A model generated the notes under the pieces. That model made no database searches. It saw only the letters and a list, made by a program, of their open reading frames with translations, and was not told the DNA's origin. From the NCBI RefSeq assembly GCF_001194135.2, contig NC_068992.1:47847069-47911068 (forward strand): a stretch of 64,000 nt of DNA. The letters run 5' to 3'. Below, piece after piece: positions 5,549 through 63,630 of this stretch. The DNA is from Octopus bimaculoides (lineage: Eukaryota). The stretch's first letter is position 1. Each line of letters starts with the position of its first letter. A program made the position numbers and the translations under genes.

Positions 5549-6199
5549 NNNNNNNNNNNNNNNNNNNNNNNNNNNNNNNNNNNNNNNNNNNNNNNNNNNN
5601 NNNNNNNNNNNNNNNNNNNNNNNNNNNNNNNNNNNNNNNNNNNNNNNNNNNNNNNNNNNNNNNNNNNNNNNNNNNNNNNNNNNNNNNNNNNNNNNNNNNN
5701 NNNNNNNNNNNNNNNNNNNNNNNNNNNNNNNNNNNNNNNNNNNNNNNNNNNNNNNNNNNNNNNNNNNNNNNNNNNNNNNNNNNNNNNNNNNNNNNNNNNN
5801 NNNNNNNNNNNNNNNNNNNNNNNNNNNNNNNNNNNNNNNNNNNNNNNNNNNNNNNNNNNNNNNNNNNNNNNNNNNNNNNNNNNNNNNNNNNNNNNNNNNN
5901 NNNNNNNNNNNNNNNNNNNNNNNNNNNNNNNNNNNNNNNNNNNNNNNNNNNNNNNNNNNNNNNNNNNNNNNNNNNNNNNNNNNNNNNNNNNNNNNNNNNN
6001 NNNNNNNNNNNNNNNNNNNNNNNNNNNNNNNNNNNNNNNNNNNNNNNNNNNNNNNNNNNNNNNNNNNNNNNNNNNNNNNNNNNNNNNNNNNNNNNNNNNN
6101 NNNNNNNNNNATATATATATATATATATATATATACATACATACATAGATGCAAGAGTGGCTGTGTGGTAGTAGCTTGCTTGCTAACCACAGTTAAGTC

Positions 6200-7900
6200 G
6201 ATCCCTATAACATAGTCTCTCTACCATGAGGATTTGATAATTTATGCATATATTCATGTTCAGCCTTCCCTTAAATAAATCTGATGTTAAATGTTTGCAA
6301 GTTTTGCTTGTTTGTAATATATGCGGCCAGCCTAATCTCACAGCATGACTAATACAGTAATTAAGCAATTACACCTATCACAACAATAACAATCAATTGT
6401 TTTTTGGAAATTTTTAACCTCACAAACTTTTTGGGGAAAACTTGAAACTAGAATCTCTGAGTCACTTAATATGGTTTCAGAATCCACTAGTTAAACTTTA
6501 AACTGGTAATCTTCTAGGATTGCAATGAATCCCCTTACCTGAGCTAATTCTGAAGCACTCCAATCCTCTGGATTTTCTTTGAAAATAGCTGAGAATTCAG
6601 TAATTTTGTTGGACAAAATGAATACTTGCCCCAATGAATAATTTAAATGTTTCTCTGGTAATTTTGGAAAGTTTGATCCAACAATTTCATCTTGTAGGGC
6701 TGCTTGAGCTCCCAACTTTGAGAAAAAAATTGAAATTTCTTTTAAAGTTCGGAAGAAAATTTGACCTTCGCAAGTATTTTAAGCCAATTAAGAGAGTACC
6801 AAGTTAATTGAGTGTGCATAACAATGTACAAATATGACAGTCACACCAAAAAAATCTCCTATATTCTTGCTTGTATCCATTCAAATGCCCAGTCATCATA
6901 CTCACTCCATCAAAAAGTTTACCCAATGAATTTTTGACCACAGTTGAATTCATTAACAAATGTTCAATCTTTTGCCAATGTTGTTAGCTTTTCTATATTT
7001 ACTGACATTGACATATATCAAAACTCTTTCTAGAGATTTTCCTTCTCATTAACAAAATGCACAATGTGTAACAACTGGAATTTCGTTTGAAGATCCATAG
7101 TCTCATCAAACATAACAGCAACAAAAAATGGGGTTTTTTTTGGGGGGGGGGGTTTCAATCATTGCCTTAATTTTACCTTCAATTGTAGCAGCTATACAAT
7201 TAATGATCTCATTTTGAATATCACTTTGAAAGTTCAGAAAATGTGCAGTTGACATTTTTCTTCACAAAATCTAAATGCAATCTTAAATAATCATTGTATT
7301 CCGCTACTGCTTCACATATAGCAAGAAAATTACCCTTATTGTTTGGTTCTTCTGTTTCATCGTGTCCGCCAAATGGTAATTCTTGACAAGCCGAAATTTC
7401 AATACTATGAATTAACCTTTTCAATATATCATGATTTTCCTCCACTGATCTATTATGGAACTGACTCAAAGCTGCTTTCCAGTGATTGATTACTTCATCA
7501 ATCCATTGTCAGCCAAAGATTTTCAGAGCAATTACAGAATTCAGATGGTTCTGAGATTTTTGTGTTTTGTCAAAGCTGTAATCAAATTGTGCGAATTGCA
7601 ATAGCCAGTAGTTGTCCATGTGTTCTTATCCTGACAAAATAACAGACATTGGAAACAGAACAATTTGTTCAGAATGGGACATCCTATCATAATACTTGGA
7701 ATCAAAATAACGATGACATTCTTTGCTGTCTACTTAGGTTTTAATTTTCAGTTCAAGCTCTGGCATCTCTTTTCTGAGAATAATATCCTTCTTCTCTTCA
7801 AAGTTGCTTCTTGTAAAATGTCAGGAAAGCAGAGAGGAAACTGCCATCCTGGGGTTGAGTGAAAGTCTGAAATATTTTACTGGGTTATAATATTTTTAAA
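6200..7900 (-). pseudogene. Decayed hAT-superfamily transposase (ZMYM1-like, ZnF_TTF + DUF4371)
   Basis: The minus strand gives FCFQCLLFCQDKNTWTTTGY...KHKKSQNH (TTF-type zinc finger), ELPFGGHDETEEPNNKGNFLAICEAVAEYNDYLRLHL (DUF4371 motif) and FVAVMFDETMD (first catalytic Asp region). Many stops and frameshifts; no TIRs identified. Confidence 0.85.
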
Positions 7901-8179
7901 TGGATTGAAGCTTTATTCTGACAAAAAATTTAGGTGCTGGTTTTCTTTTTTATATAACCTTTTTAAATAATTTCGAATATTTAAAATTCAATTTTAGAAG
8001 TATTGGTATGGACAAATGGATGAAAACATTACTTTTTAATCACAAAAAAATTAACTTTGCTGGCTGCTTCTTTTCACCTCAAGTGTGAACTAGCGAAGAA
8101 GAAAACTCTGGGTAGTGGTCGCATGATTGGATTTAGGTCTTAAGAAGGGATCAAGAATACGGGTAAAATCTTTTTAAAA

Positions 8180-8548
8180 AGCAAGCACAGCTGTGTCTTA
8201 AGAAATTTGCGTCACAACCATATGACTCTGAGTTCAATTCAACTGTGTGGCATCATGAGCCAGGTGTCCTCTTCTATAGCTTCAGGGTGGTCAATGCCTT
8301 GTGAGTGGATTTGGTAGACAAAAATGGAAAGAAGCCTTGGGGTGGGGGGCATGTGCGTATCCAACACCACCACTTGACAATCATTGCTGGTGTGTTTATG
8401 TAACTTAGTGGTTTGGCAAAAGGAGCTGATAAAATATGTATGAAACCTAACAAAAGTACTGGGGTCAATTCATTCAACTAAATATTCTTCAAGGCTGAGC
8501 CTTAGAATGGTCATAGTCTAATGACGGAAACATGTAAAAGAGTAAAAT
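8180..8548 (+). mobile_element. SINE family A, diverged near-full-length copy
   Basis: Collinear with 9216-9620: head, CCTTGTGAGTGGATTTGGTAGAC block, CCAGCATGGC-like block and GTAAAAGAG tail. Confidence 0.8.
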
Positions 8549-9215: not shown

Positions 9216-9620
9216 AGCGTAGGAGTGGCTGTGTGGTAAGTAGCTTGCTTACCAACTACATGGTTCCGGGTTCAGTCCCACTGCATGGCACCTTGGGCAA
9301 GTGTCTTCTACTATAGCCTCGGGCTGACCAAAGCCTTGTGAGTGGATTTGGTAGACGGAAACTGAAAGAAGCCCGTCATATATAAGTATATATATTTATA
9401 TGTGTGTGTGTCTGTGGTTGTCCCCCCAACATCGCTTGATAACCGACGGTGGTTTGTTTACGTCCCCGTAACTTAGCGGTTCGGCAAAAGAGACCAATAG
9501 AATATGTACTAGGCTTCCAAAGAATAAGTCCTGGGGTCGATTTGCTTGACTAAAGGTCGTGCTCCAGCATGGCCACAGTCAAATGACTGAAACAAGTAAA
9601 AGAGTAAAAGAGTAAAGAGT
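9216..9620 (+). mobile_element. SINE family A, full-length young copy (tRNA-like head, internal TA/TG microsatellite, (GAGTAAAA)n tail)
   Basis: A-box-like TGGCTGTGTGG and B-box-like GGTTCAGTCCC; near-identical in reverse complement to 28981-29413 and 47812-48203. Confidence 0.9.
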
Positions 9621-29194: not shown

Positions 29195-29258
<64 letters not shown>

Positions 29259-29413
29259 GACGGGCTTCTTCCAGTTTCCGTCTACCAAATCCACTCACAA
29301 GGCTTTGGTCAGCCCGAGGCTATAGTAGAAGACACTTGCCCAAGGTGCCATGCAGTGAGACTGAACCCAGAACCATGTGGTTGGTAAGTAAGCTACTTAC
29401 CACACAGCCATGC
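28981..29413 (-). mobile_element. SINE family A, full-length young copy
   Basis: Reverse complement of 9216-9620, with an expanded internal (TA)n. Confidence 0.9.
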
Positions 29414-31740: not shown

Positions 31741-32140
31741 AGGTGTAGTCTTGGTTGTGTAGTAAAAGCTTGCTTCCTAACCATATATTGTTCCAGGTTC
31801 AGTCCCACTGATGGCACCTTGGGCAAGAGTCTTCTACCATAGTCTTGGGCTGATCAAAGCCTTGTGAGTGAATTTCAGAAACTGAAAGGAACCCATCATA
31901 AATATATATATCCGCACGCATATGTGTGTGTGTGTGTTTGAGTCTGCATTTGTCCCCTATTACCATTTGAAAACCGATGTTGGTGTATTTATGTCTCCAT
32001 AACTTATTGATTGAGCAAAAGAGACCAACAGAATAAGAACTAGGATTAAAAATAAGCCCTCGGGTCAAATTGTTTGACTAAAAACCCTTCAGGGTAGTGC
32101 TCCAGCATGGCAGCAGTCAAATGGCTGAAACAAGTAAAAG
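31741..32140 (+). mobile_element. SINE family A, full-length diverged copy
   Basis: Collinear with 9216-9620. Confidence 0.85.
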
Positions 32141-33598: not shown

Positions 33599-34305
33599 CA
33601 TGGTTCAATGGGTAAAATGTCACCATATTATATTTTTAATTTCGCGCATGTGCCTTGTTTTTGATTTTGTTGACTACACAGTACGGTGGGGTCAGTTGGG
33701 CACTGTCTGTGAGAAAACCGGCACCATGACGCGATTCACTATGACAGAAATTTGGGAATGACATGCTGTACTGCTTGGCATTCATGCTAAAAGCTCCAAT
33801 GCAAACATTTCAGAGTGTTAGGGTGTCAAATCTGAGGACATATAGTGAGAGTGATAAAAATCAAACATCCAGTCAACATCATGGTGTCTGGAATGATCAT
33901 TAGCAATGTTGACGTTATGCCTCCATTCATCTCCCCACACAGCCTCACACTCAATACGGAGGCCTATATCAATTGCCTGGAGGAGGTAGTGCCACCCTGG
34001 GTCAAGAGGGTGACTGCTGATAGACCCTATGTCTGGCAGCAGCACTCTGCACCATGCCATACAAGCATGAGAACCCAGTCATGGCTGTCAGACAATTTCT
34101 GTGACCACATCACTCTTAACATCTAGCTACCTAACTCCCCAGACTTCAACCCTCTTGATTATTATATGTGGGGTGCATTTGAAAGAGCGACCAACAAAAC
34201 TCCTTGTAACACAAAGATGAACCGAAGACAAAGATTATGGCAGCATTCACCAACTTAAAGAAGGAGACCATCCAGAAGAGTTTCAGGAAATTCCAAAGTC
34301 ATCTG
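33599..34305 (+). mobile_element. Internally deleted, inactive maT (DD37D) Tc1/mariner transposon
   Basis: Starts after a (TA)n run; ATG at 33726 gives MTRFTMTEIWE*HAVLLGIHA, then jumps to KHPVNIMVSG...DVMPPF...EAYINCLEEVV.PW...RPYVWQQHSAPCHTS...I*LPNSPDFNPLDYYMWGAFE. There are 37 residues between the second catalytic position (D mutated to H) and the final D; W has become a stop; the 3' end is truncated. Confidence 0.9.
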
Positions 34306-37325: not shown

Positions 37326-37576
37326 AATGGTTAATGTTGTTGTTGTTGTTTAGTCTCAGCTCAGTCCTGATCAACCAGATGTATCATCAAAGATGTTCTA
37401 GATGTGACATTCACACCTAGAACATTATCCAATTGTGACCAAGAATGTAAGAGAGCTGTGGTTGTCATTTCTAGCAGGTTCATTGATGACATAGAGGTGG
37501 AAGGGGTATAGTCCCTCTTTTTCAGTTATAATAACATTGCATTGATATAACTTCATTGCTTAGCACTCCCTCTCCG

Positions 37577-39725: not shown

Positions 39726-40799
39726 ATCTAGTATAGCCAGAGAACAATATTTGTGTATCACACCTTGTCCCTACAACAGAACTACTTATGTACTCACAGG
39801 TTTTCAAGATAAGGGTTGGCTACAGCTACACATCAATAAAAACAATTTTATCAACAACTATAATAACAATAACAACAACATCAACAACAGTTGCAACAAC
39901 AGAGTTAAGTAAGTTTCCTAAGAATACTGCTATGAAGTGATAATATATAGACAGATAGTTTGATAGTTTGGCAGCTAACCATCAGTGTGTCGTTAAAACT
40001 ATCTTAATTTAATGATATTGCCCTCCACAAAACAAACCCCCTGTCATGCCCTTCACATTCTTAACCTCCCATAAATTATAGTCATAAACATAAACCGAAA
40101 CATTTAACTCCCATAAATGCAATCCTAACAAAATTCCATAGATATTGCCGTCCATTAAATACAATATGAAATGAGATGCTGTTTGGTTTGTTTTGTTTTT
40201 AATTTATATTTATATTCTCCTGTTTTTCTTTTCTGTTATTAATTTATCGTTTGTTGCTTTTTTTTTAAAAAATTCCAACTGTATAAACATTGTCTATATT
40301 TCATGTCTGTGAGATATGAGACGAGACAGAAAATATTTCCATTGTGCATTTGTAATGTTGTGTAAATGCTTCATGACCCTAGAGGGTTGGGTCAACACAG
40401 AAGGTTTTTATCTACATATGTTGTTATACTGTGGCCAACATGCTAAGTGATATTATCCACTCCACTCCTCTGACCACATCTACAGCCTGATATTGCTGTT
40501 TGCGGTGAGGAATCAGTAACTAAAATTTAAGCAATTAAACTACATACTCACAAATTTTATGGACAAAAAATCTATAGTTTTAGATGTGGGAAAAAGATGT
40601 AATATTGTTATTTAACACCAGAACAACCATCATTGATCAGTTATGATCAAAGACACTCCAACCATGACCATTTCATGTTGTCTTTTACAGATATCTCAAA
40701 CTACATTATCTAATATTGTCCTTTCTTAATAAAAATTATTGAATGCAATTTAAGTAAGATCTGGCTACTATTCCTAGCAAGTCAAGTGATCGCATAAAG

Positions 40800-40924: not shown

Positions 40925-41298
40925 TTTTATCTTTTACATGTTTCAGTCATCTGACTGCGACCATACTGGAGCACCAATCTGAAGATCTTTTAGTCATATG
41001 TATCAACCCCAGTACTTGTTACATTTTTTTTTAAAGCCTGGTACTTACTCTGTCGGTCTCTTTTGCTAAACTGCTAAATTACGGGGACATAAACACACCA
41101 ACACTGGTTGTCAAGTAAAAGTGGGGAGGACAAACACACACACACACATATATACATATATATGTTGAGCTTCTTTCGGTTTCCATCTATCAAATCCAGT
41201 CACAAGGATTTGGTCGGTCCGAGACTACAGCAGAAGACACTCGCTTAAGGTGCCACACAGTGGAACCATATGGTTGGGAAGCAAGCTTCTTACCAGAC
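40925..41298 (-). mobile_element. SINE family A, near-full-length
   Basis: Reverse complement collinear with 9216-9620. Confidence 0.85.
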
Positions 41299-42155: not shown

Positions 42156-43397
42156 ATAAACCAGGGCTGCTCTTTTGGGAGGGCACTGAAAAACTACCAT
42201 GTTTATGTAGTGTGACATGGTTGAATAAACAAATACAAGATATTCCCAGGGAGACTACAAACCAAGGAGGAAGCTTCTACATGGTCGCTAAACCTGCTAC
42301 AAATAGCAGCTAAATCATCCTTAAACTGAACCCCACCATTGCATTTTACATTGTGGCTATCCTAATATAAGATATTAGGATAGCCACAATGGAAATGTAG
42401 TATTAGGTGGGATGGTCATGGCTGGAGTACTTTTAACGACAGAGCTGCTCGATCAGGATCAGCCTGATGTAAAACAACTGTAATAATAATAATACTATAA
42501 ATGGGGGAGGGAGTAAGTGGCATTGGTATGAGATGTTGAAGCATTCATGCATTTCTTTTGAGTACGAGTGATGGAAGTGAAGTCAATGGCTCCATCAATT
42601 AAAAGAAACTCAAGTAACAAACTCACCTTGACTAAGTGTTTATCTCAATTTAACAGAACTCAACAGAACGGTAAATATCTCTCTCCTGCACACTCCACAC
42701 TTAATTCCCTTCCTTTAGAATCTCATTAACTACAAGGGACATACTCAGTGTCAGTGGGGAATCCTTATTTGAAAATATCTTCATATTATGTGCGTTTAAT
42801 CAGCAATGTGTTCTCTCTTACATTAACTCGAGTTATATATCTCATTAAGTCAGAGATCAAAGGTGGTATAAATTTGGGAAATGATACATAAGGGAGAATC
42901 TAGTTTAAACATATATTTACGCTATGAATTTGATACTTTTGAAATTCTTTCTCTTGGTTCCTGGCTTAAGTTAGATATGTTAGTTTAAGCTTCACTTAAT
43001 TAACCGATATCAAACCTGTATTACATTGATAATGGAATTAACATATTTCGTCTGGCGTTTAATTGCAACAGCATCTCATTAATGCCTGTTGTGTAACTGA
43101 TTTTATACAAAAGCTGGACAGGCATTGCAAGAAGCTATTTCGGTGAGACAGAATTAAGAATCTTAAAATCAACATATTTATGCTCAATAAGCCCAGACAA
43201 CACCAACACATAGAGAGGGTGTCTAGTTATCCATTCATCACCTTCACACTGTGTCCATTCAGCCAACACCTATAACGTAATAAATTATATACTTCAGCAC
43301 ACATTATATAACGTAATTATTATGTGTGCGTATATAAACATCCTTTAATGTTGTTGTGAAAATTGTTTAAGGTTAAAATTCCAGCTATTGATTGAGA

Positions 43398-43773: not shown

Positions 43774-43803
43774 NNNNNNNNNNNNNNNNNNNNNNNNNNN
43801 NNN

Positions 43804-44019: not shown

Positions 44020-44274
44020 AGCATGAGGATGCAGGATATCAGGCTTTACTACTACAATTAAAGCTGATATCCTCCATCGTCGTGTTATATTATTCTTATA
44101 TTCATCTTATTCTGCAGTAGGATATTTTCCAGGGCTGGATACACATGTGGAACTCCTCTATGCATAACACGTGGTAGCCAAATAATGACATAAAAGTTCT
44201 TAAATGCACAGTATGAAGATTTTACCCAAACTATACTAAACATATATATGTATATCCAGTTCACATGTAGCTCT

Positions 44275-44580
44275 ATCTCCCCAGTCAACATATACACACT
44301 GTGTCTATCTACCCTGTCAACTTCTACAAATTGTGACAATCCATCCAGTCAATATCTATGCACTGAGTTTGTCGATCCAGTCAACATCTATGCATTGTGA
44401 CTGTCAATCCAGTCAACTTTTACATACTGTGTTATCCAGTCAACATCAACTCAGTGTGTCATCTTACCCTGTTAACATTATCTACACACTATGTCATTCT
44501 ATCCTGTCAATATTTCTACACACTGTGTTTCTCTATCCAGTCAACATTTACACACTTATCTATGCATACAGTAAATATAT
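44275..44580. repeat. Degenerate minisatellite, about 30-35-bp unit (TATCCAGTCAACATCTACACACTGTG-like), about 10-11 copies
   Basis: Recurrent CC(A/T)GTCAA core read directly. Confidence 0.8.
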
Positions 44581-44769
44581 ACAGTCTGTGAGTCGCATAG
44601 GATGAAGAGAAAGTGGATGTGCTTCATCAGGTTTACTTAGCCATCAATAACACTATGTGTGTAGCTAGATTAGCTTCTACATGTATACTACATCACTAAC
44701 CACTGTGTTTGTGTTTATGGGTATCTGTATGTATGTATATCACATTAGAAATTAACCATGAAGAGATTC

Positions 44770-44830
44770 ACTTACTTGTATTATTCCAAATTTGGGACTT
44801 ACCTGCAAAGGAAAATAAAAAGAAACTTTA
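44770..44830 (-). promoter_or_regulatory. Candidate recursive splice site with a 27-nt RS-exon/microexon (44802-44776)
   Basis: Minus strand: AACTAAAGTTTCTTTTTATTTTCCTTTGCAG|GTAAGTCCCAAATTTGGAATAATACAA|GTAAGTG. Confidence 0.55.
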
Positions 44831-45185
44831 GTTATATTATTCTTGAGGATTAAAGAAATGTTGGAGAGATCTGCATTGATTAAACAAACAAAACTACTGT
44901 ATTAATTAATTGTATTAATTAATTTTTGAAAGTTGTTGTTGTTTAAACCAAGGTGATTCCTCATTCAACAGCTCAATGATTAAAGGGGTTCCAGCTATGA
45001 CCATCCTGCATTTTATTTCCAAACAAGCAGTGAATCTGGATGGTCAACTGGCAAAATTATTAAAGCATTAGTCAAATACAGCATGACATTTAATCCAGCT
45101 CATTGCCTTTGAGTTCAAATCCAACTAAAGTAAACTTCCCCTTTTATCCTTCTGGAAGAGGGCATGCAATATAATAAAAAAAAAG

Positions 45186-45330
45186 GGTGGCAAGCTGACA
45201 GAATCATTAGCATACCGGGCGAAATGCCTAGCAGTATTTTGTCTGCTGTTATGTTCTGAGTTCAAATTCCGCCAAGGTCAGCTTTGCATTTCAACTTTTC
45301 GGGATCACTTAAATAAGTACCAGTGGTGGT
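45186..45330 (+). mobile_element. SINE-like family C, truncated
   Basis: GGCAAGCTGACAGAATCATTAGCATACCGGGCGAAATGC...GTTCTGAGTTCAAATTCCGCCAAGGTC. Confidence 0.85.
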
Positions 45331-45387: not shown

Positions 45388-45444
<57 letters not shown>

Positions 45445-45607
45445 ATATGACAGGCTTCTTTTCATTTTCTGTCCACCAAATTCATTCACAAGGATTTGAT
45501 CAGCCCGAGGCTATAGTAGAAGACACATGCCCAAGGTGCCATGCACTAGGACTGAACATAGACCCATGGGGCTTGGAATCAAGTTTCTTACCACATAGCT
45601 ATGCCTA
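45445..45607 (-). mobile_element. SINE family A, 5' half
   Basis: GAGGCTATAGTAGAAGACACATGCCCAAGGTGCCATGCA. Confidence 0.85.
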
Positions 45608-47811
45608 TGATGAAGAATAAATTTTACAACCATGGTAAGAATATATTTAACAAAAAAAAAAAACGATATTTAACAAAAACACTTTATTTAGTCCAGTATA
45701 TTAATTCTGGCACCACCATTCCACTACTAGTCATGAGGTGCCAGAAAGATTAACAGACTTAAAAGCACAGAGAGCTTTTGACAATTCTAGTTTCAAATTT
45801 GAAAGAACACTTGAGGAAGAAATAAAGCAGAAAAGCTGTCATCACTTTTAATGAAAACCAACTGTAGTTTCCGAATAAACCAGGCAGAATATGAAATACG
45901 CAATAATATAAATATCATCACAAGGTTTTTTTTCATAACTCACACTTAGCAAGGAGACCTAGCACTGGACAGCTGAATGGGTGAGCAGCTGGAAGTCTAA
46001 GAGAGGCTGTATAGTTGAGGTGGGCACCCGCCTTGCTTCAGTGTAAAGTTTGTTTTATAACTTCCCTCTTTAACTCACCATTAACTTGTTTATCAGCATT
46101 TGTCAGCTCTCATTACAAAATTCGAGCTTTATCTCAACTGAATTCTACTCTAGTTACAAGTGAAGTATATGAACAATATCAGTGTGCATGCATGTACGTG
46201 TGTGTGTGTGTATATATATCTGTTCATGTGTCTGTAGATGTATGTTAATTCATGTGTGTGTGTGTGTATGCGCAAATATTTACATGTGTGTGTGGATATA
46301 TATTCTGTGAGTACGAGAATGCATTTTTCTAAAAGTTAAGGGTTGGGGTAGAATTGTTAAGCTATCATAGCTTCTTCTTTCCAATTATCACCACCACCAC
46401 ACTACCACCATCACCACCACAAAAACAACATCTTGTCTAAAACGTTAAGTATATTTTATTCGAGATGAGCAAAGCTTCCGCAATCTCATAATGTAACATA
46501 CATTCCCCAACATTTATTCGTTGTTATGTTTTTACATGCGCATACTGCAAAACACAGACACCTACTCATAAACATTCACATGTGTGCGTGTATATTTATA
46601 TATACATATGTACGTATTTACCTACATATATATATATATANNNNNNNNNNNNNNNNNNNNNNNNNNNNNNNNNNNNNNNNNNNNNNNNNNNNNNNNNNNN
46701 NNNNNNNNNNNNNNNNNNNNNNNNNNNNNNNNNNNNNNNNNNNNNNNNNNNNNNNNNNNNNNNNNNNNNNNNNNNNNNNNNNNNNNNNNNNNNNNNNNNN
46801 NNNNNNNNNNNNNNNNNNNNNNNNNNNNNNNNNNNNNNNNNNNNNNNNNNNNNNNNNNNNNNNNNNNNNNNNNNNNNNNNNNNNNNNNNNNNNNNNNNNN
46901 NNNNNNNNNNNNNNNNNNNNNNNNNNNNNNNNNNNNNNNNNNNNNNNNNNNNNNNNNNNNNNNNNNNNNATATATATATATATATATATAGTATGTATAC
47001 ATATATGCAAGTATGTGTGTATGTATGTCTGTATATATGTAAATGCATACATATATATACACACTGTTTCTCACTCATCTCTTGACACACATTCACCTAC
47101 ACAGATGCACACTTGAATATTTGAGTGTGTATGTGGAGAAATATATTTAAATGAATATAAAAATGTGTGTTTGTGTATGTGTGCATGTACACACACACAC
47201 ACATATATATATATATTATGTCTACACAAATATACATACATACATATGTAAGTATGTATGTTTAAATTTAATATGTGTTTACCCATGCAGTAATGAGTTA
47301 AAGAGGTTTTCTACACAACATATCACCACATATCTTGATCTTGTATCATCTCATCTGTAAAGACCATTCACACATTCCTATAAAGTGAGATTGGCTCAGT
47401 GGGTAAGGTACTGGTCTACCTACCTAGACAACATGAGTTCAAGTGTGTTACAGGTACTACAATTTCTGAAGGGAATATTCTATTTGGTCCACCAAATTCC
47501 TTAGTAATAGACAGTAAAACTTGTGATGAAAATTGTTCCATCCATTGGCCCCTAATCTTTTCTTTCCAGTATAGTGGATCTACAAATACATTATGCTTCA
47601 TGTACATTCCTTTTTAAGAGGGTAGGGTGTGAATTGATTGCTATTTCTAGCATGTCAAACAACCACAAAGAGGCTCTCTCAGAGAGGTTGGTGAGTAAAT
47701 AAACAGACTGTAGCAATTGTCTAAATGTAACATATACGGTTGTATGTATGTATATACACACATACATATAAATCTATGCACATGTATGTACGTATGTGTA
47801 TGTTTGCTGTA

Positions 47812-48203
47812 TACTCTTTTACTCTTTTACTTGTTTCAGTTATTTGACTGTGACCATGCTGGAGTACCACCTTTAGTCAAGCAAATCGACCCCAGGACTT
47901 ATTCTTTGTAAGCCTAGTACTTATTCTATCGGTCTCTTTTGAAGGAACCGCTAAGTTACGGGAACATAAACACACCACTATCGGTTGTCAAGTGATGTTG
48001 GGGGGACAAACACAGACACACAAACATACATATACATATATACGACGGGCTTCTTTCAGTTTCCGTCTACCAAATCCACTCACAAGGCTTTGGTCGGCCC
48101 GAGGCTATAGTAGAAGACACTTTGCCCAAGGTGCCACACTGTGGGACTGAACCCAGAACCATGTGGTTAGTAAGTAAGCTCCTTACCACACAGTCACTCC
48201 TGT
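47812..48203 (-). mobile_element. SINE family A, full-length young copy
   Basis: Near-identical reverse complement of 9216-9620. Confidence 0.9.
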
Positions 48204-49219
48204 AGTACCTGTAACATATTTGTATATATATATATATATATATNNNNNNNNNNNNNNNNNNNNNNNNNNNNNNNNNNNNNNNNNNNNNNNNNNNNNNNNN
48301 NNNNNNNNNNNNNNNNNNNNNNNNNNNNNNNNNNNNNNNNNNNNNNNNNNNNNNNNNNNNNNNNNNNNNNNNNNNNNNNNNNNNNNNNNNNNNNNNNNNN
48401 NNNNNNNNNNNNNNNNNNNNNNNNNNNNNNNNNNNNNNNNNNNNNNNNNNNNNNNNNNNNNNNNNNNNNNNNNNNNNNNNNNNNNNNNNNNNNNNNNNNN
48501 NNNNNNNNNNNNNNNNNNNNNNNNNNNNNNNNNNNNNNNNNNNNNNNNNNNNNNNNNNNNNNNNNNNNNNNNNNNNNNNNNNNNNNNNNNNNNNNNNNNN
48601 NNNNNNNNNNNNNNNNNNNNNNNNNNNNNNNNNNNNNNNNNNNNNNNNNNNNNNNNNNNNNNNNNNNNNNNNNNNNNNNNNNNNNNNNNNNNNNNNNNNN
48701 NNNNNNNNNNNNNNNNNNNNNNNNNNNNNNNNNNNNNNNNNNNNNNNNNNNNNNNNNNNNNNNNNNNNNNNNNNNNNNNNNNNNNNNNNNNNNNNNNNNN
48801 NNNNNNNNNNNNNNNNNNNNNNNNNNNNNNNNNNNNNNNNNNNNNNNNNNNNNNNNNNNNNNNNNNNNNNNNNNNNNNNNNNNNNNNNNNNNNNNNNNNN
48901 NNNNNNNNNNNNNNNNNNNNNNNNNNNNNNNNNNNNNNNNNNNNNNNNNNNNNNNNNNNNNNNNNNNNNNNNNNNNNNNNNNNNNNNNNNNNNNNNNNNN
49001 NNNNNNNNNNNNNNNNNNNNNNNNNNNNNNNNNNNNNNNNNNNNNNNNNNNNNNNNNNNNNNNNNNNNNNNNNNNNNNNNNNNNNNNNNNNNNNNNNATT
49101 CAATTACACAGGAAGGTATAGGAAAAACTGAAGACAAAAAGATGAGAGAAGAATTTACAAGATTTGATATCAGAATAGTGGACCTTTCAGCTTACATAGG
49201 AAAGATAGGAGAGTGATCC

Positions 49220-53689: not shown

Positions 53690-53900
53690 TGGGGAATTGG
53701 CAGAATCCTTAGCACACTGGACAAAATGCTTTGCAGTATTTCATTTGTCTTTACATTCTGAATTCAAATTCCATCAAGGCTGACTTTGCCTTTCATCCTT
53801 TTAGGATGGATAAAATAAGTACATGTGCAGGGGTGAATGTATTTGACTAGCCCTATCCCCAAAATTTCAAGCCTTGTGCCTATTGTAGAAAAGATTATTG
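53690..53900 (+). mobile_element. SINE-like family C
   Basis: TTGGCAGAATCCTTAGCACACTGGACAAAATGCT...CTTTGCCTTTCATCCTTT...AAATAAGTAC; a short head-only copy lies at about 53240-53300. Confidence 0.8.
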
Positions 53901-56475: not shown

Positions 56476-56687
56476 GAGGTGAGCTCGCAGAAATGTTAGC
56501 ACACCAGATGAAATGCTTAGTGGTATTTCATTTGTCTTCACGTTCTGAGTTCAAATTCCGCCAAGGTCGACTTTGCCTTTCATCTTTTCGGGGTCGATAA
56601 ATTAAGTACCAGTTGTATATTGGAATCGATCTAGTCAAGTGGCCCTCTCTCCAAAAACTTCGGGCCTTGTAGAGTAGAAAAGAATAT
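56476..56687 (+). mobile_element. SINE-like family C, full-length
   Basis: GGAGGTGAGCTCGCAGAA...GTTCTGAGTTCAAATTCCGCCAAGGTCGACTTTGCCTTTCATC...GGGGTCGATAAATTAAGTACCAG. Confidence 0.9.
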
Positions 56688-58189: not shown

Positions 58190-58717
58190 TGTATGTATAC
58201 ACACACGTACAGACACAGTTATCCTGCCTGTCTCTCTCTCTCAGCCTTCATTTTCTTTAGTGCTTCATACTTCTTCAACACCATCATCACTACCATTACT
58301 AACACCAACACCACTAGTGGCCAACAACAATCATCTTAACATGGGTGTCTCTATGTGGTCATTGATCTTCTAGAAATAGCAGCCAAATAAACCTCAAATT
58401 ACATACTATCACCTTAAGAAAAAGTTTATGTAGGCAAACATAGTCCTGAATTCTTCTCCATATAGAAAAAAAAGATGGAATGGTCATAGTTGGAATGTCT
58501 GATCACTGGAATGCTTAGTCAGGGATGACCCGGAGCTAAAACATCAACCACCACCACCATTTTCACTACCACCACCAACAACAACAACACCTGTATTACC
58601 AATAATGCCAGCACTTTATATTATAGTTTAGAATCAGTTGTTTTTAAGCATATATTTACCATTCTTCAATTTGATGCAAATGAACAGTTGTGAATGAACA
58701 CACATATATATAAATAC

Positions 58718-59687: not shown

Positions 59688-60068
59688 CAGTGTTCAACTG
59701 GTACTTATTTTATCGATCCTGAAAGTGTGAAAAGTAAGGTCGACTTTCGCAGAATTTGAACTCAGAACATAGCGATGGGCAAAATACCACTACGCATTTC
59801 ATCCAGTGTGTTAACAATTCTGCCACCTTGCTACCTTGATGATAATGATGATGATGATAATGATAATAATATTTCATGTAAATATTATAAATAATGGTTT
59901 GAAATTTTGGCACAAAGCCAGCAAGATCAGGTGATACTTATTTCACCAACCCTGAAAGGCTGAAAAGTAAAACTGACCTCAGTGGAATTTGAACTCAGAA
60001 TGTGAAGACAGACGAAATACTGTTAAGCATTTTGTCCAGCATGCTAACGATTTTGCCAGCTCACTGCC

Positions 60069-60199: not shown

Positions 60200-60420
60200 A
60201 ATATTTCATGTAAAATATTATAAATAATAGTTTAAAATTTTGGTAAAAGTCCAACAAGAACAGGTGATATTTTATTGACCCCAAAAGGATGAAAGGCTAA
60301 GTCGACCTCAGCAGAATTTGAACACAGATTATAAAGCATCAGAAGAAATGTTACTAAGCATTTTGTCTGATGCACTAATGATTATGCCAGCTTGACACCT
60401 TAATAACAATAATAATAATA
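59688..60420 (-). mobile_element. Three head-to-tail copies of SINE-like family C separated by (AAT)n/(GAT)n tracts
   Basis: GAATTTGAACTCAGAA block at about 59753, 59986 and 60314; each copy ends ...CCTT(A/G)AT(A/G)ATAAT on the plus strand. Confidence 0.85.
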
Positions 60421-62566: not shown

Positions 62567-62899
62567 CAACCACCACTACAACTATGCAACAAATACTATC
62601 AGAAACTCCATTAGTTACCACCACAACTACTATAACAAACAGTCACTACAACCACCATCATCACCAACACCATTGGTAATGTTTTGATGAAGGACTCTCA
62701 AAGCAAGGACTTGACCTGTCAGAGATAGCAGCAAGATGTCTCTCAATCAAACCCTAGAATTTCAAAAGAAAGACACACTGGATGTGATCCTGGCTACTGG
62801 AATCGATGGGGGTGGTTGTGGATGGATTGTCTTTGATCGTAAGTCAGCTGGATCAGGCTTGACCAGGATTTAAACAACAACAACAACAACACAAACAAA

Positions 62900-63630
62900 T
62901 TATTACAGTTATACCACAAACACCACCACCACCACCAGCTCAACTACACCAGGACCCCCCCACACACACATACACCAACAGATTGAACATCAACCAAAAC
63001 CATCACCATCACATCAGAAGCGCCAACCTCTCAACCACCACCAATACCACTACTAAGTCAGAAATATTATTAGCTCTACCATCATTGCTATTACTACTAA
63101 CACCAACACAATACAAGAAATACTACCAGTGCTACACCAGCACAAACTACTACCATCATCATCAACATCACTAGCACAAAGACACCTTTGCTAGCACCAA
63201 CACGAAACACTGCCAACTACAGACACAACACAAGACAAACCACTACCACATTCAACTCTACTGCAACCACTTCTCCTACCACACCAGAACACAACTCTCC
63301 CCCACCACTACCACTACCATCAAGAGAATTGCCAAACAAAAAACATCGACACCACCACCACCACTACAACTGCCACCATGAACGTTACTACACTAAACAC
63401 CACTACTGCAACTACTACACCACAACCATCATCACCGGTGCCATCACCACTGCCATCATGAATATTACCATGCAACAGACACCAATACCACCACCACCAC
63501 CACCACCACCACCACTACAACTGCCACTACTGCAACTATCACACCAACACCACCACCATGTAACACACACACACCTCCTTCAAGAACAACGTCCCCTCAC
63601 CCCCACCATCATGATGCTTTTGCCAATACT
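62900..63630. repeat. (CAC/CAA/ACT)-rich low-complexity region
   Basis: Direct reading; a complementary (GGT/GAT)-rich tract lies at about 58925-59280. Confidence 0.85.

What the first reader, a model, noticed from the sequence alone, without database searches (positions are those of the whole stretch)
44770..44830. Candidate recursive splice site with a frame-preserving 27-nt RS-exon
Seen: on the minus strand a strong acceptor (branch-like AACTAAA, about 20-nt pyrimidine tract, TGCAG) is immediately followed by a perfect donor GTAAGT, and a second perfect GTAAGT lies exactly 27 nt later. It is in non-repeat sequence and is the only such juxtaposition I found. Established: YnCAG|GTAAGT is the ratchet-point consensus in long Drosophila and vertebrate introns, and a competing downstream donor defines an RS-exon. 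Inference: the window lies in a very long intron of a minus-strand gene that is removed stepwise, with optional inclusion of 9 codons (VSPKFGIIQ in phase 0 or xKSQIWNNT in phase 1; phase 2 gives a stop). I am not aware of recursive splicing having been described in cephalopods.
Basis: partly seen in the sequence, partly recalled or inferred. Interest (0 to 1): 0.75.

Follow-up and report, generated by a model that had tools for sequence, protein, structure and literature searches.

The report
Unvalidated recursive-splice-site-like motif
The sequence really does contain a textbook "recursive splice site" motif on the minus strand, but nothing available here shows that this DNA is transcribed, spliced or conserved, so it stays an untested and more likely fortuitous candidate.

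Summary
On the minus strand a CTAAA branch-like element, an 18/19 pyrimidine tract and CAG (ending at 44803) abut GTAAGT (44802-44797). A second GTAAGT follows exactly 27 nt later (44775-44770). It is the only AG|GTRAGT-type site with a good pyrimidine tract on either strand. It lies in a 150-nt single-copy island. The chance expectation is about 0.003-0.02 per window, or 1-5e-4 with the second donor.

The interpretation could not be tested. No host exon was found on either strand by Pfam or protein searches. There is no coherent strand asymmetry and no CpG island. No orthologous or transcript sequence was retrievable, so gene membership, strand, conservation and use are all unknown.

If this is an octopus genome of about 2.7 Gb, composition alone predicts hundreds of such juxtapositions and about 5-25 with a double donor. 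The literature calls that genome mostly intergenic. In humans only about 1% of motif-plus-conservation candidates gained junction support.

My estimates:
- fortuitous pseudo-site: about 0.55
- genuine ratchet point: about 0.28
- ordinary or regulated 27-nt microexon: about 0.10

If real, it would be a new member of a known kind. I found no paper describing recursive splicing in cephalopods or molluscs.

The parts
44827..44831 (-). Branch-point-like CTAAA. It matches CUAAY / yUnAy at 4 of 5 positions. The putative branch A is at 44828, 25 nt upstream of the AG|GT junction.
   Evidence: Read directly. The distance falls in the 20-50 nt range reported for recursive sites (PMC6110456). No functional evidence.
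44807..44825 (-). Polypyrimidine tract TTTCTTTTTATTTTCCTTT, 18 of 19 pyrimidines and U-rich.
   Evidence: 18/20 pyrimidines in the scoring window. Only 10 YAG sites in the window, both strands together, reach 18/20.
44803..44805 (-). Acceptor CAG, preceded by UG so that it reads UGCAG.
44797..44802 (-). First GTAAGT, directly abutting the acceptor. This is the putative ratchet-point donor. CAG|GTAAGT is 9/9 complementary to the 5' end of U1 snRNA (established knowledge).
   Evidence: It is the only AGGTAAGT in the window on either strand.
44776..44802 (-). 27-nt interval GTAAGTCCCAAATTTGGAATAATACAA, the putative RS-exon or microexon. GC is 0.30. Two of three frames are open.
   Evidence: Its composition equals the intron-like background. 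No protein homology is testable at 9 aa.
44770..44775 (-). Second GTAAGT, in the context CAA|GTAAGTG. This is the putative RS-exon donor.
44755..44904 (.). Single-copy island that contains the motif. It lies between a microsatellite-like stretch (about 44651-44754) and a roughly 100-bp interspersed repeat (44905-45019).
   Evidence: Self-BLAST. TRF.

Best explanation
The motif is most likely a fortuitous pseudo-splice site. A short T-rich tract ending in CAG happens to be followed by GTAAGT, with another GTAAGT 27 nt on. It sits in AT-rich, repeat-laden non-coding DNA that is not transcribed as minus-strand pre-mRNA, or in which the site is not used. On this reading it does nothing.

Shown: the motif exists, it is unique in the window, and it is improbable per window.
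Inferred: that it is non-functional. This follows from genome-scale expectation, the low prior of lying in a sense-strand intron, and the absence of any supporting signal.
For: - Genome-scale expectation. With the window's own frequencies the chance rate is 0.0034-0.017 per 60 kb for the juxtaposition and 1-5e-4 with the second GTAAGT. Over an assumed 2.7-Gb genome (about 45,000 such windows) that is about 150-790 and about 5-24 sites from composition alone.
- No exon, domain or protein homologue of a host gene on either strand.
- No other recursive-site-like motif in 64 kb.
- No coherent strand bias. GTAAGT is 26(+)/10(-), but GTAAG is 56/48, AATAAA is 75/62, and acceptor-like sites are 28/24. 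GC and TA skews after repeat masking are not significant, p = 0.46 and 0.21.
- The 27-nt interval has background composition, GC 0.30.
- The O. bimaculoides genome is described as mostly intergenic, with over 85% of CpGs intergenic (PMC9476566). This applies only if the window is from that genus, which I did not verify.
- In human, motif plus strong 3' splice site plus conservation gave 36,870 sites, of which 342 had junction support in the cells studied (PMC6110456).
Against: - Per window the configuration is rare: 0 of 300 simulations and an expectation of at most 0.02.
- Every informative position matches the ratchet-point consensus: branch-like element at -25, clean AG-free tract, CAG|GTAAGT, and a downstream donor as needed for RS-exon definition.
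- The site lies in a unique island rather than a repeat.
- The region is not locked in RNA structure (z = +1.1).
- Uniform CpG depletion (o/e 0.29, with GpC 0.98) could mean a germline-methylated gene body. In octopus, methylation concentrates in gene bodies (PMC9476566).
- If the minus strand is transcribed in a long intron, signals this strong would probably be recognised.
Confidence: 0.55

Rival explanations
1. A genuine intronic ratchet point.

Proposed mechanism: the window is part of a long intron of a minus-strand gene. The 27-nt RS-exon is defined by the acceptor at 44803 and the donor at 44775. The upstream exon is spliced to 44802, which regenerates a 5' splice site (exon end + GTAAGT). 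That site then competes with CAA|GTAAGT.

If the upstream exon ends in the usual AG or G, the regenerated site is the stronger one. The 27 nt are then removed with the rest of the intron, which is zero-nucleotide recursive splicing.
For: - The motif is perfect and unique in the window, and the per-window chance is low.
- A downstream donor is present, as required for RS-exon definition and donor competition (PMC8605326; PMC6110456).
- The branch-like element sits at the expected distance.
- The window has no exons in 64 kb and is CpG-depleted throughout. That is compatible with a very long intron of a methylated gene body.
Against: - There is no evidence of a minus-strand gene, of transcription or of conservation.
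- The 27-nt RS-exon is shorter than the roughly 50-nt fly cryptic RS-exons. From my own knowledge, it is also below the usual size for exon definition.
- The downstream donor is almost as strong as the ratchet donor, so efficient skipping is not guaranteed.
- Genome-wide chance sites may equal or outnumber real ones.
Confidence: 0.28
2. A conventional, possibly neuron-specific, 27-nt cassette microexon that happens to begin with GTAAGT. A variant is an expressed RS-exon like the Ubx microexons. Either way it would be included in mRNA as 9 codons, VSPKFGIIQ or xKSQIWNNT, perhaps depending on an SRRM/eMIC-type activator.
For: - The length is 27 nt, a multiple of 3, and two frames are open.
- UGC lies immediately upstream of the AG, the pyrimidine tract is long, a CUAAY-like branch site is present and the donor is strong. 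This partly matches the eMIC-microexon cis code (PMC8797185).
Against: - The chance that a true microexon starts with GTAAGT is about 3e-4, so this class should be rarer genome-wide than fortuitous sites.
- The tract is U-rich rather than UCUC-rich, and the AG-free zone is only 21 nt.
- Exon composition is not distinguishable from intron.
- No host gene was found.
- A 9-aa peptide cannot be searched meaningfully.
Confidence: 0.1
3. The motif is part of a low-copy transposable element or another non-splicing element. Examples are the plus-strand AATAAA at 44814-44819 or the CArG-like palindrome CCAAATTTGG at 44786-44795. On this reading the splice-like appearance is incidental.
For: - The island is flanked on both sides by repeats.
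- The window is dense in SINE-like, hAT and mariner remnants.
- The complement of the pyrimidine tract contains AATAAA, and the 27-mer contains CC(A/T)6GG.
Against: - There is no paralogue of 44755-44904 in the window.
- AATAAA occurs 137 times in the window.
- By my own composition estimate, not computed with a tool, several CC(A/T)6GG are expected per window by chance.
Confidence: 0.05

Closest known systems
Drosophila intronic ratchet points with cryptic RS-exons (e.g. Ubx, kuz, Bx; PMC8605326, PMC6110457)
   Same: Both have a juxtaposed acceptor and donor with a long U-rich tract, CAG|GTAAGT, and a downstream competing donor that delimits a short RS-exon. Both fit the donor-competition logic.
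   Different: - Fly sites are ultraconserved and sit in annotated long introns, with saw-tooth or junction evidence. None of that is available here.
- Fly cryptic RS-exons are about 50 nt and generally out of frame. Here the interval is 27 nt and in frame.
- The downstream donor here is as perfect as the ratchet donor.
Vertebrate recursive splice sites and RS-exons in long neuronal genes (Sibley et al. 2015 as cited in PMC8605326; PMC6110456; PMC6224609)
   Same: Both have an AGGT core, a strong 3' splice site, a branch point 20-50 nt upstream, and a downstream 5' splice site that defines an RS-exon.
   Different: - Human sites were accepted only with conservation plus junction or saw-tooth evidence.
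- 68% of human RS-exons carry a premature stop. Here one of three phases does.
- Status here is unknown.
Expressed RS-exons: Ubx microexons mI/mII (51 nt, conserved, frame-preserving; PMC8605326)
   Same: Both are short, frame-preserving exons with a regenerated donor at the 5' end and their own donor at the 3' end. Inclusion and skipping are both possible outcomes.
   Different: The Ubx microexons are deeply conserved across all 51 nt and are documented in mRNA. Here there is no mRNA or conservation evidence, and the composition is intron-like.
eMIC/SRRM4-dependent neuronal microexons (PMC8797185)
   Same: Both are at most 27 nt and a multiple of 3, with UGC next to the 3' splice site, a long pyrimidine tract and a CUAAY-like branch site.
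   Different: The tract is U-rich rather than UCUC-rich. The AG exclusion zone is short. There is no host gene, no neural inclusion data and no orthologous microexon.
Intronic or intergenic pseudoexons and decoy splice sites
   Same: Both show consensus-quality splice signals with no evidence of use, and both occur at rates predictable from composition.
   Different: This example is unusually strong, with a perfect acceptor plus two perfect donors.

Membership tests
Recursive splice site (ratchet point) | Juxtaposed strong 3' splice site and 5' splice site around AG|GT (Yn-NCAG|GTAAGT) | tested here: met
   There are 18/20 pyrimidines followed by CAG|GTAAGT. It is the only such site in the window.
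Recursive splice site (ratchet point) | Branch-point motif 20-50 nt upstream, with an AG-free interval to the acceptor | tested here: inconclusive
   CTAAA matches CUAAY at 4 of 5 positions, with the A at -26. The only intervening AG abuts the branch A. This is a sequence match only.
Recursive splice site (ratchet point) | Downstream 5' splice site that defines an RS-exon and competes with the regenerated donor | tested here: met
   CAA|GTAAGT lies at +27. However, 27 nt is shorter than the roughly 50 nt typical in flies.
Recursive splice site (ratchet point) | Location on the sense strand inside a long intron of an expressed gene | tested here: inconclusive
   No exon or host gene was detectable on either strand. 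The window's ORFs are absent from the assembly index. Strand-asymmetry tests were null. No annotation is available.
Recursive splice site (ratchet point) | Evolutionary conservation of the acceptor|donor core above its flanks | not testable with these tools
   No orthologous cephalopod DNA could be reached. The local-ORF protein search was empty and an exact 39-mer was absent from the metagenome contigs.
Recursive splice site (ratchet point) | RNA evidence: junction reads to the site, saw-tooth intronic coverage, and lariats of the partial introns | not testable with these tools
   No RNA-seq access.
eMIC/SRRM4-type neuronal microexon | Length of at most 27 nt, frame-preserving | tested here: met
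   The interval is 27 nt and two frames are open.
eMIC/SRRM4-type neuronal microexon | UGC close to the 3' splice site, a long UCUC-rich pyrimidine tract, a strong CUAAY branch site and a long AG exclusion zone (PMC8797185) | tested here: inconclusive
   UGC is present (UGCAG) and the tract is long, but it is U-rich. The branch site is CUAAA rather than CUAAY. The AG-free zone is only 21 nt.
eMIC/SRRM4-type neuronal microexon | Inclusion in (neural) mRNA of a coding gene, with an orthologous microexon in relatives | not testable with these tools
   No transcript data are available, and a 9-aa peptide is too short for homology search.

The most novel reading that the evidence does not exclude
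The site is a genuine ratchet point in a very long intron of a cephalopod gene, which would probably be neuronal. In the papers I could search, that would be the first recursive splice site described outside insects and vertebrates. Its 27-nt, frame-preserving RS-exon has a UGC-flanked acceptor. That would link recursive splicing to a regulated microexon, with either Ubx-like optional inclusion of 9 codons or a poison outcome in one phase.
Probability: 0.28. Interest if true: 0.5.

Novelty: not a real feature. Interest (0 to 1): 0.25.

Why it matters
If validated, it would extend recursive splicing to lophotrochozoans and cephalopods, whose genomes are large and repeat-rich. It would also give a concrete locus for RT-PCR and minigene work. 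My library searches found no paper on recursive splicing in octopus, cephalopods or molluscs.

The mechanism is already established in flies and vertebrates, so this would be an expected extension rather than a conceptual surprise. As it stands it is one motif match. The informative experiment is a genome-wide one, not this locus alone.

Tried and rejected
- **Host-gene exons.** I scanned all non-low-complexity ORFs of at least 45 aa on both strands against Pfam. The only hit was a weak DUF4371 (hAT) match.
- **Packed protein searches.** ORFs within about 700 nt of the site gave no hits. All minus-strand ORFs of at least 48 aa gave no hits at 1e-5.
- **Recovering the source contig.** Exact look-up of three window ORFs found none on record.
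- **Taxon.** TE ORFs matched only unnamed Logan (SRR8281670/71) and Tara Oceans contigs. The run accessions appear in no paper. The cephalopod origin therefore stays unverified. From memory, the SINE at 45444-45607 resembles the abundant octopus SINE, which is a lead and not a test.
- **Exact 39-mer search.** The site's 39-mer was absent from JGI metagenome contigs.
- **Strand-of-transcription inference.** Cryptic donor, poly(A)-signal and acceptor counts and GC/TA skews after TRF masking gave no usable signal. The GTAAGT imbalance of 26 vs 10 is not shared by related hexamers.
- **Splice-signal exon scan.** It found 5 candidates on each strand, as expected by chance. The best plus-strand one, 47570-47690, has no relative among 1.84 billion representatives.
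- **Rfam and tRNA scans.** Both were empty.
- **RNA folding of the site.** It is no more structured than shuffles.
- **MaxEntScan-type scoring.** The model tables are not available offline, so I used consensus and U1-complementarity arguments instead.

Full report
**1. The observation**

One search gives the minus strand around the finding as:

...AATAATATAACTAAAG-TTTCTTTTTATTTTCCTTTGCAG|GTAAGT-CCCAAATTTGGAATAATACAA-GTAAGT-GAATC...

- The acceptor G is at 44803.
- The abutting GTAAGT is 44802-44797.
- The second GTAAGT is 44775-44770, so the interval 44802-44776 is exactly 27 nt.
- CTAAA lies at 44831-44827, which puts a candidate branch A 25 nt upstream of the junction.
- The only AG between that A and the CAG lies immediately next to it. 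From general splicing knowledge, that is too close to a branch point to be used.
- Two of the three frames of the 27-mer are open (VSPKFGIIQ and xKSQIWNNT) and the third has TAA.

**2. Is it more than chance?**

- It is the only AGGTAAGT on either strand.
- In a relaxed scan for AG|GTRAG-like sites, it is the only one with at least 14/20 upstream pyrimidines. It has 18 and the runner-up has 12.
- First-order Markov simulations give about 2.1 AGGTAAGT per window, but 0 of 300 simulations had one behind a tract of at least 16/20 pyrimidines.
- The window really contains 52 acceptor-like sites at >=16/20 pyrimidines plus YAG, and 10 at >=18/20. Combined with the measured GTAAGT frequency of 3e-4, this gives 0.017 and 0.0034 expected juxtapositions per window.
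- Adding a second GTAAGT within 100 nt gives 5e-4 and 1e-4.

So the motif is a real outlier within this window. Scaled to an assumed 2.7-Gb genome, about 45,000 such windows, composition alone predicts about 150-790 juxtapositions. It predicts about 5-24 with a double donor.

**3. Repeat status**

Self-BLAST shows that 44755-44904 has no paralogue in the window. It is a 150-nt island between two repeats:
- a CA/TA microsatellite-like stretch at about 44651-44754
- a roughly 100-bp interspersed repeat at 44905-45019, with copies at 25471-25568, 42410-42502, 62810-62911 and elsewhere

Whole-genome copy number is untested.

**4. Surroundings and gene context**

The window looks like gap-ridden, repeat-rich animal DNA:
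- GC is about 0.32.
- It has 17 N gaps, 4,053 N in total.
- It has many microsatellites and SINE-like repeats.
- A decayed hAT element lies at 6423-8160 on the minus strand. It is 80% identical at the nucleotide level to intact 722-aa transposase genes in Logan runs SRR8281670/71 and in a Tara Oceans contig.
- A mariner-like fragment lies at 33836-34123.

I could not verify that the organism is a cephalopod. The run accessions appear in no paper. My recollection that the SINE at 45444-45607 is the abundant octopus SINE is only a lead.

No host-gene exon was found:
- Pfam on all non-low-complexity ORFs of at least 45 aa on both strands gave only the hAT DUF4371 fragment.
- Protein searches with the local ORFs and with all minus-strand ORFs of at least 48 aa returned nothing.
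- A splice-signal exon scan gave 5 candidates per strand, which is the chance level.
- The best plus-strand candidate, 47570-47690, has no relatives among 1.84 billion representative proteins.
- Rfam and tRNA scans were empty.

The window's ORFs are not in the assembly index, so the flanks could not be fetched.

**5. Strand of transcription**

If the minus strand were a long-intron sense strand, one might expect depletion of decoy donors and poly(A) signals, or a mutational skew.
- GTAAGT is 26(+)/10(-). Related strings do not follow: GTAAGA is 9/22, GTAAG is 56/48 and GTGAGT is 19/17.
- AATAAA is 75/62, and acceptor-like sites are 28/24.
- After TRF masking, GC and TA skews are -0.02 and -0.01 on the plus strand, with p = 0.46 and 0.21.

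There is no usable signal in either direction.

CpG o/e is uniformly low at 0.29, ranging 0.18-0.41 per 4 kb, while GpC o/e is 0.98. There is no CpG island. In O. bimaculoides, methylation concentrates in the bodies of a subset of genes, and the genome is described as mostly intergenic (PMC9476566). The depletion might therefore hint at a methylated gene body. Without a genome baseline this is only suggestive, and it says nothing about strand.

**6. Comparison with what defines recursive sites**

Fly ratchet points are juxtaposed acceptor|donor motifs. They are ultraconserved and lie in long introns. Each has a short cryptic RS-exon of about 50 nt with its own downstream donor. That exon is generally out of frame and poorly conserved. 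The outcome is largely set by competition between the two donors (PMC8605326; PMC6110457).

Human pipelines require an AGGT core, a strong 3' splice site, a long intron and conservation. Of 36,870 such putative sites, 342 had junction support and 16 showed a saw-tooth pattern. Branch motifs lie 20-50 nt upstream, and 68% of RS-exons carry a premature stop (PMC6110456).

Here the sequence-level criteria are met: the motif, the branch-like element and the downstream donor. The criteria that actually discriminate could not be tested: sense-strand long intron, conservation and RNA evidence.

Two details are atypical. First, the RS-exon is only 27 nt. Second, its donor (CAA|GTAAGT, 8/9 to U1) is nearly as strong as the regenerated one would be. 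Skipping is therefore not assured.

The 'frame-preserving' property has a 1-in-3 chance. If anything, it points towards a cassette or expressed RS-microexon rather than a cryptic RS-exon.

The UGC next to the AG, the long pyrimidine tract and the CUAAY-like branch site partly resemble the eMIC-microexon code (PMC8797185). However, the tract is U-rich and the AG-free zone is short.

RNA folding shows no special structure, z = +1.1.

**7. Weighing**

The number of real recursive sites in a cephalopod genome is unknown.
- With fly-like numbers (hundreds), real sites of this quality would roughly equal the chance expectation.
- With human-like numbers (tens to a few hundred), chance sites dominate.

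Combined with the absence of any supporting signal, my estimates are:
- fortuitous or unused pseudo-site: about 0.55
- genuine ratchet point: about 0.28
- conventional or regulated 27-nt microexon: about 0.10
- other (TE-derived or an unrelated element): about 0.05

The novelty label 'not a real feature' follows from my best explanation. If the site proves real, the correct label is 'new member of a known kind'.

**8. Novelty**

The library holds no paper that combines recursive splicing with octopus. Its only co-mentions with cephalopod or mollusc are incidental. A validated site would therefore be a first for the group. It would still be an expected extension of a mechanism known in flies and vertebrates.

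The most informative test is genome-wide: sense versus antisense enrichment of Yn-CAG|GTAAGT in long introns. It should be paired with total RNA-seq junction, saw-tooth and lariat evidence at 44802/44803 and with octopod alignments.

Noticed in passing
window 6423-8160 (minus): A decayed hAT-superfamily transposon with DUF4371 and TTF-type zinc-finger-like ORF fragments. It is about 80% identical at the nucleotide level, and 67-70% at the protein level, to intact transposase genes of 553-722 aa. Those genes are in Logan assemblies SRR8281670/71 and in a Tara Oceans metagenome contig.
   Followed up: partly
window 45444-45607; copies at 9220-9382, 29254-29413, 48039-48193, 31758-31894, 8185-8337, 41169-41295 and others: An abundant SINE-like repeat in both orientations, usually followed by a CA/GT microsatellite. 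Its copies create spurious ORFs such as ...YQIHSQGFGQPEAIVEDTCPRCH.... From memory it resembles the common octopus SINE; this was not tested.
   Followed up: partly
window 45186-45327; copies at 56482-56616, 16250-16387, 59697-59835, 59932-60061, 53698-53822, 60268-60399: A second interspersed repeat family of about 135 bp, lying next to the SINE-like unit.
   Followed up: no
window 44905-45019; copies at 25471-25568, 42410-42502, 62810-62911, 37339-37408, 58465-58551, 40605-40671: A roughly 100-bp interspersed repeat that ends about 100 nt upstream (in the minus sense) of the candidate acceptor. It bounds the single-copy island.
   Followed up: partly
window 44272-44563: A minisatellite with a period of about 32 nt and about 9 copies at 68% match. 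It produces a spurious 121-aa open frame on the plus strand.
   Followed up: no
whole window: Uniform, strong CpG depletion with normal GpC (o/e 0.98). CpG o/e is 0.29 overall and 0.18-0.41 in every 4-kb block. There is no CpG island. This is a signature of historical cytosine methylation. It might mark a methylated gene body, but no genome baseline was available.
   Followed up: partly
window 44786-44795: A perfect 10-bp palindrome CCAAATTTGG, of CArG-box form CC(A/T)6GG, lies inside the 27-nt interval. The complement of the pyrimidine tract carries AATAAA at 44814-44819 on the plus strand. Both are probably incidental.
   Followed up: no
window 47570-47690 (plus): An exon-like segment: acceptor ttctttccag, a 121-nt open frame, and donor GTGAGTA. 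It has no Pfam hit and no relative among 1.84 billion representative proteins. It is probably fortuitous.
   Followed up: yes
window 33836-34123 (plus): A mariner/Tc1-like transposase fragment (...RPYVWQQHSAPCHTS...). It is 46% identical to a 345-aa protein with a DDE_3 (PF13358) domain.
   Followed up: partly
whole window: GTAAGT occurs 26 times on the plus strand and 10 on the minus strand (binomial p = 0.011). GTAAGA shows the opposite bias (9/22), and GTAAG overall is balanced at 56/48. I did not check whether repeat copies cause the imbalance. It is not evidence of transcription direction.
   Followed up: partly
17 N runs, e.g. 5549-6110, 17619-18332, 48244-49097: Assembly gaps totalling 4,053 N. 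Several of those inspected are flanked by TA/CA microsatellites. This is typical of a short-read scaffold, and sequence is missing within 1 kb downstream and 2 kb upstream of the site (43774-43803 and 46641-46969).
   Followed up: no
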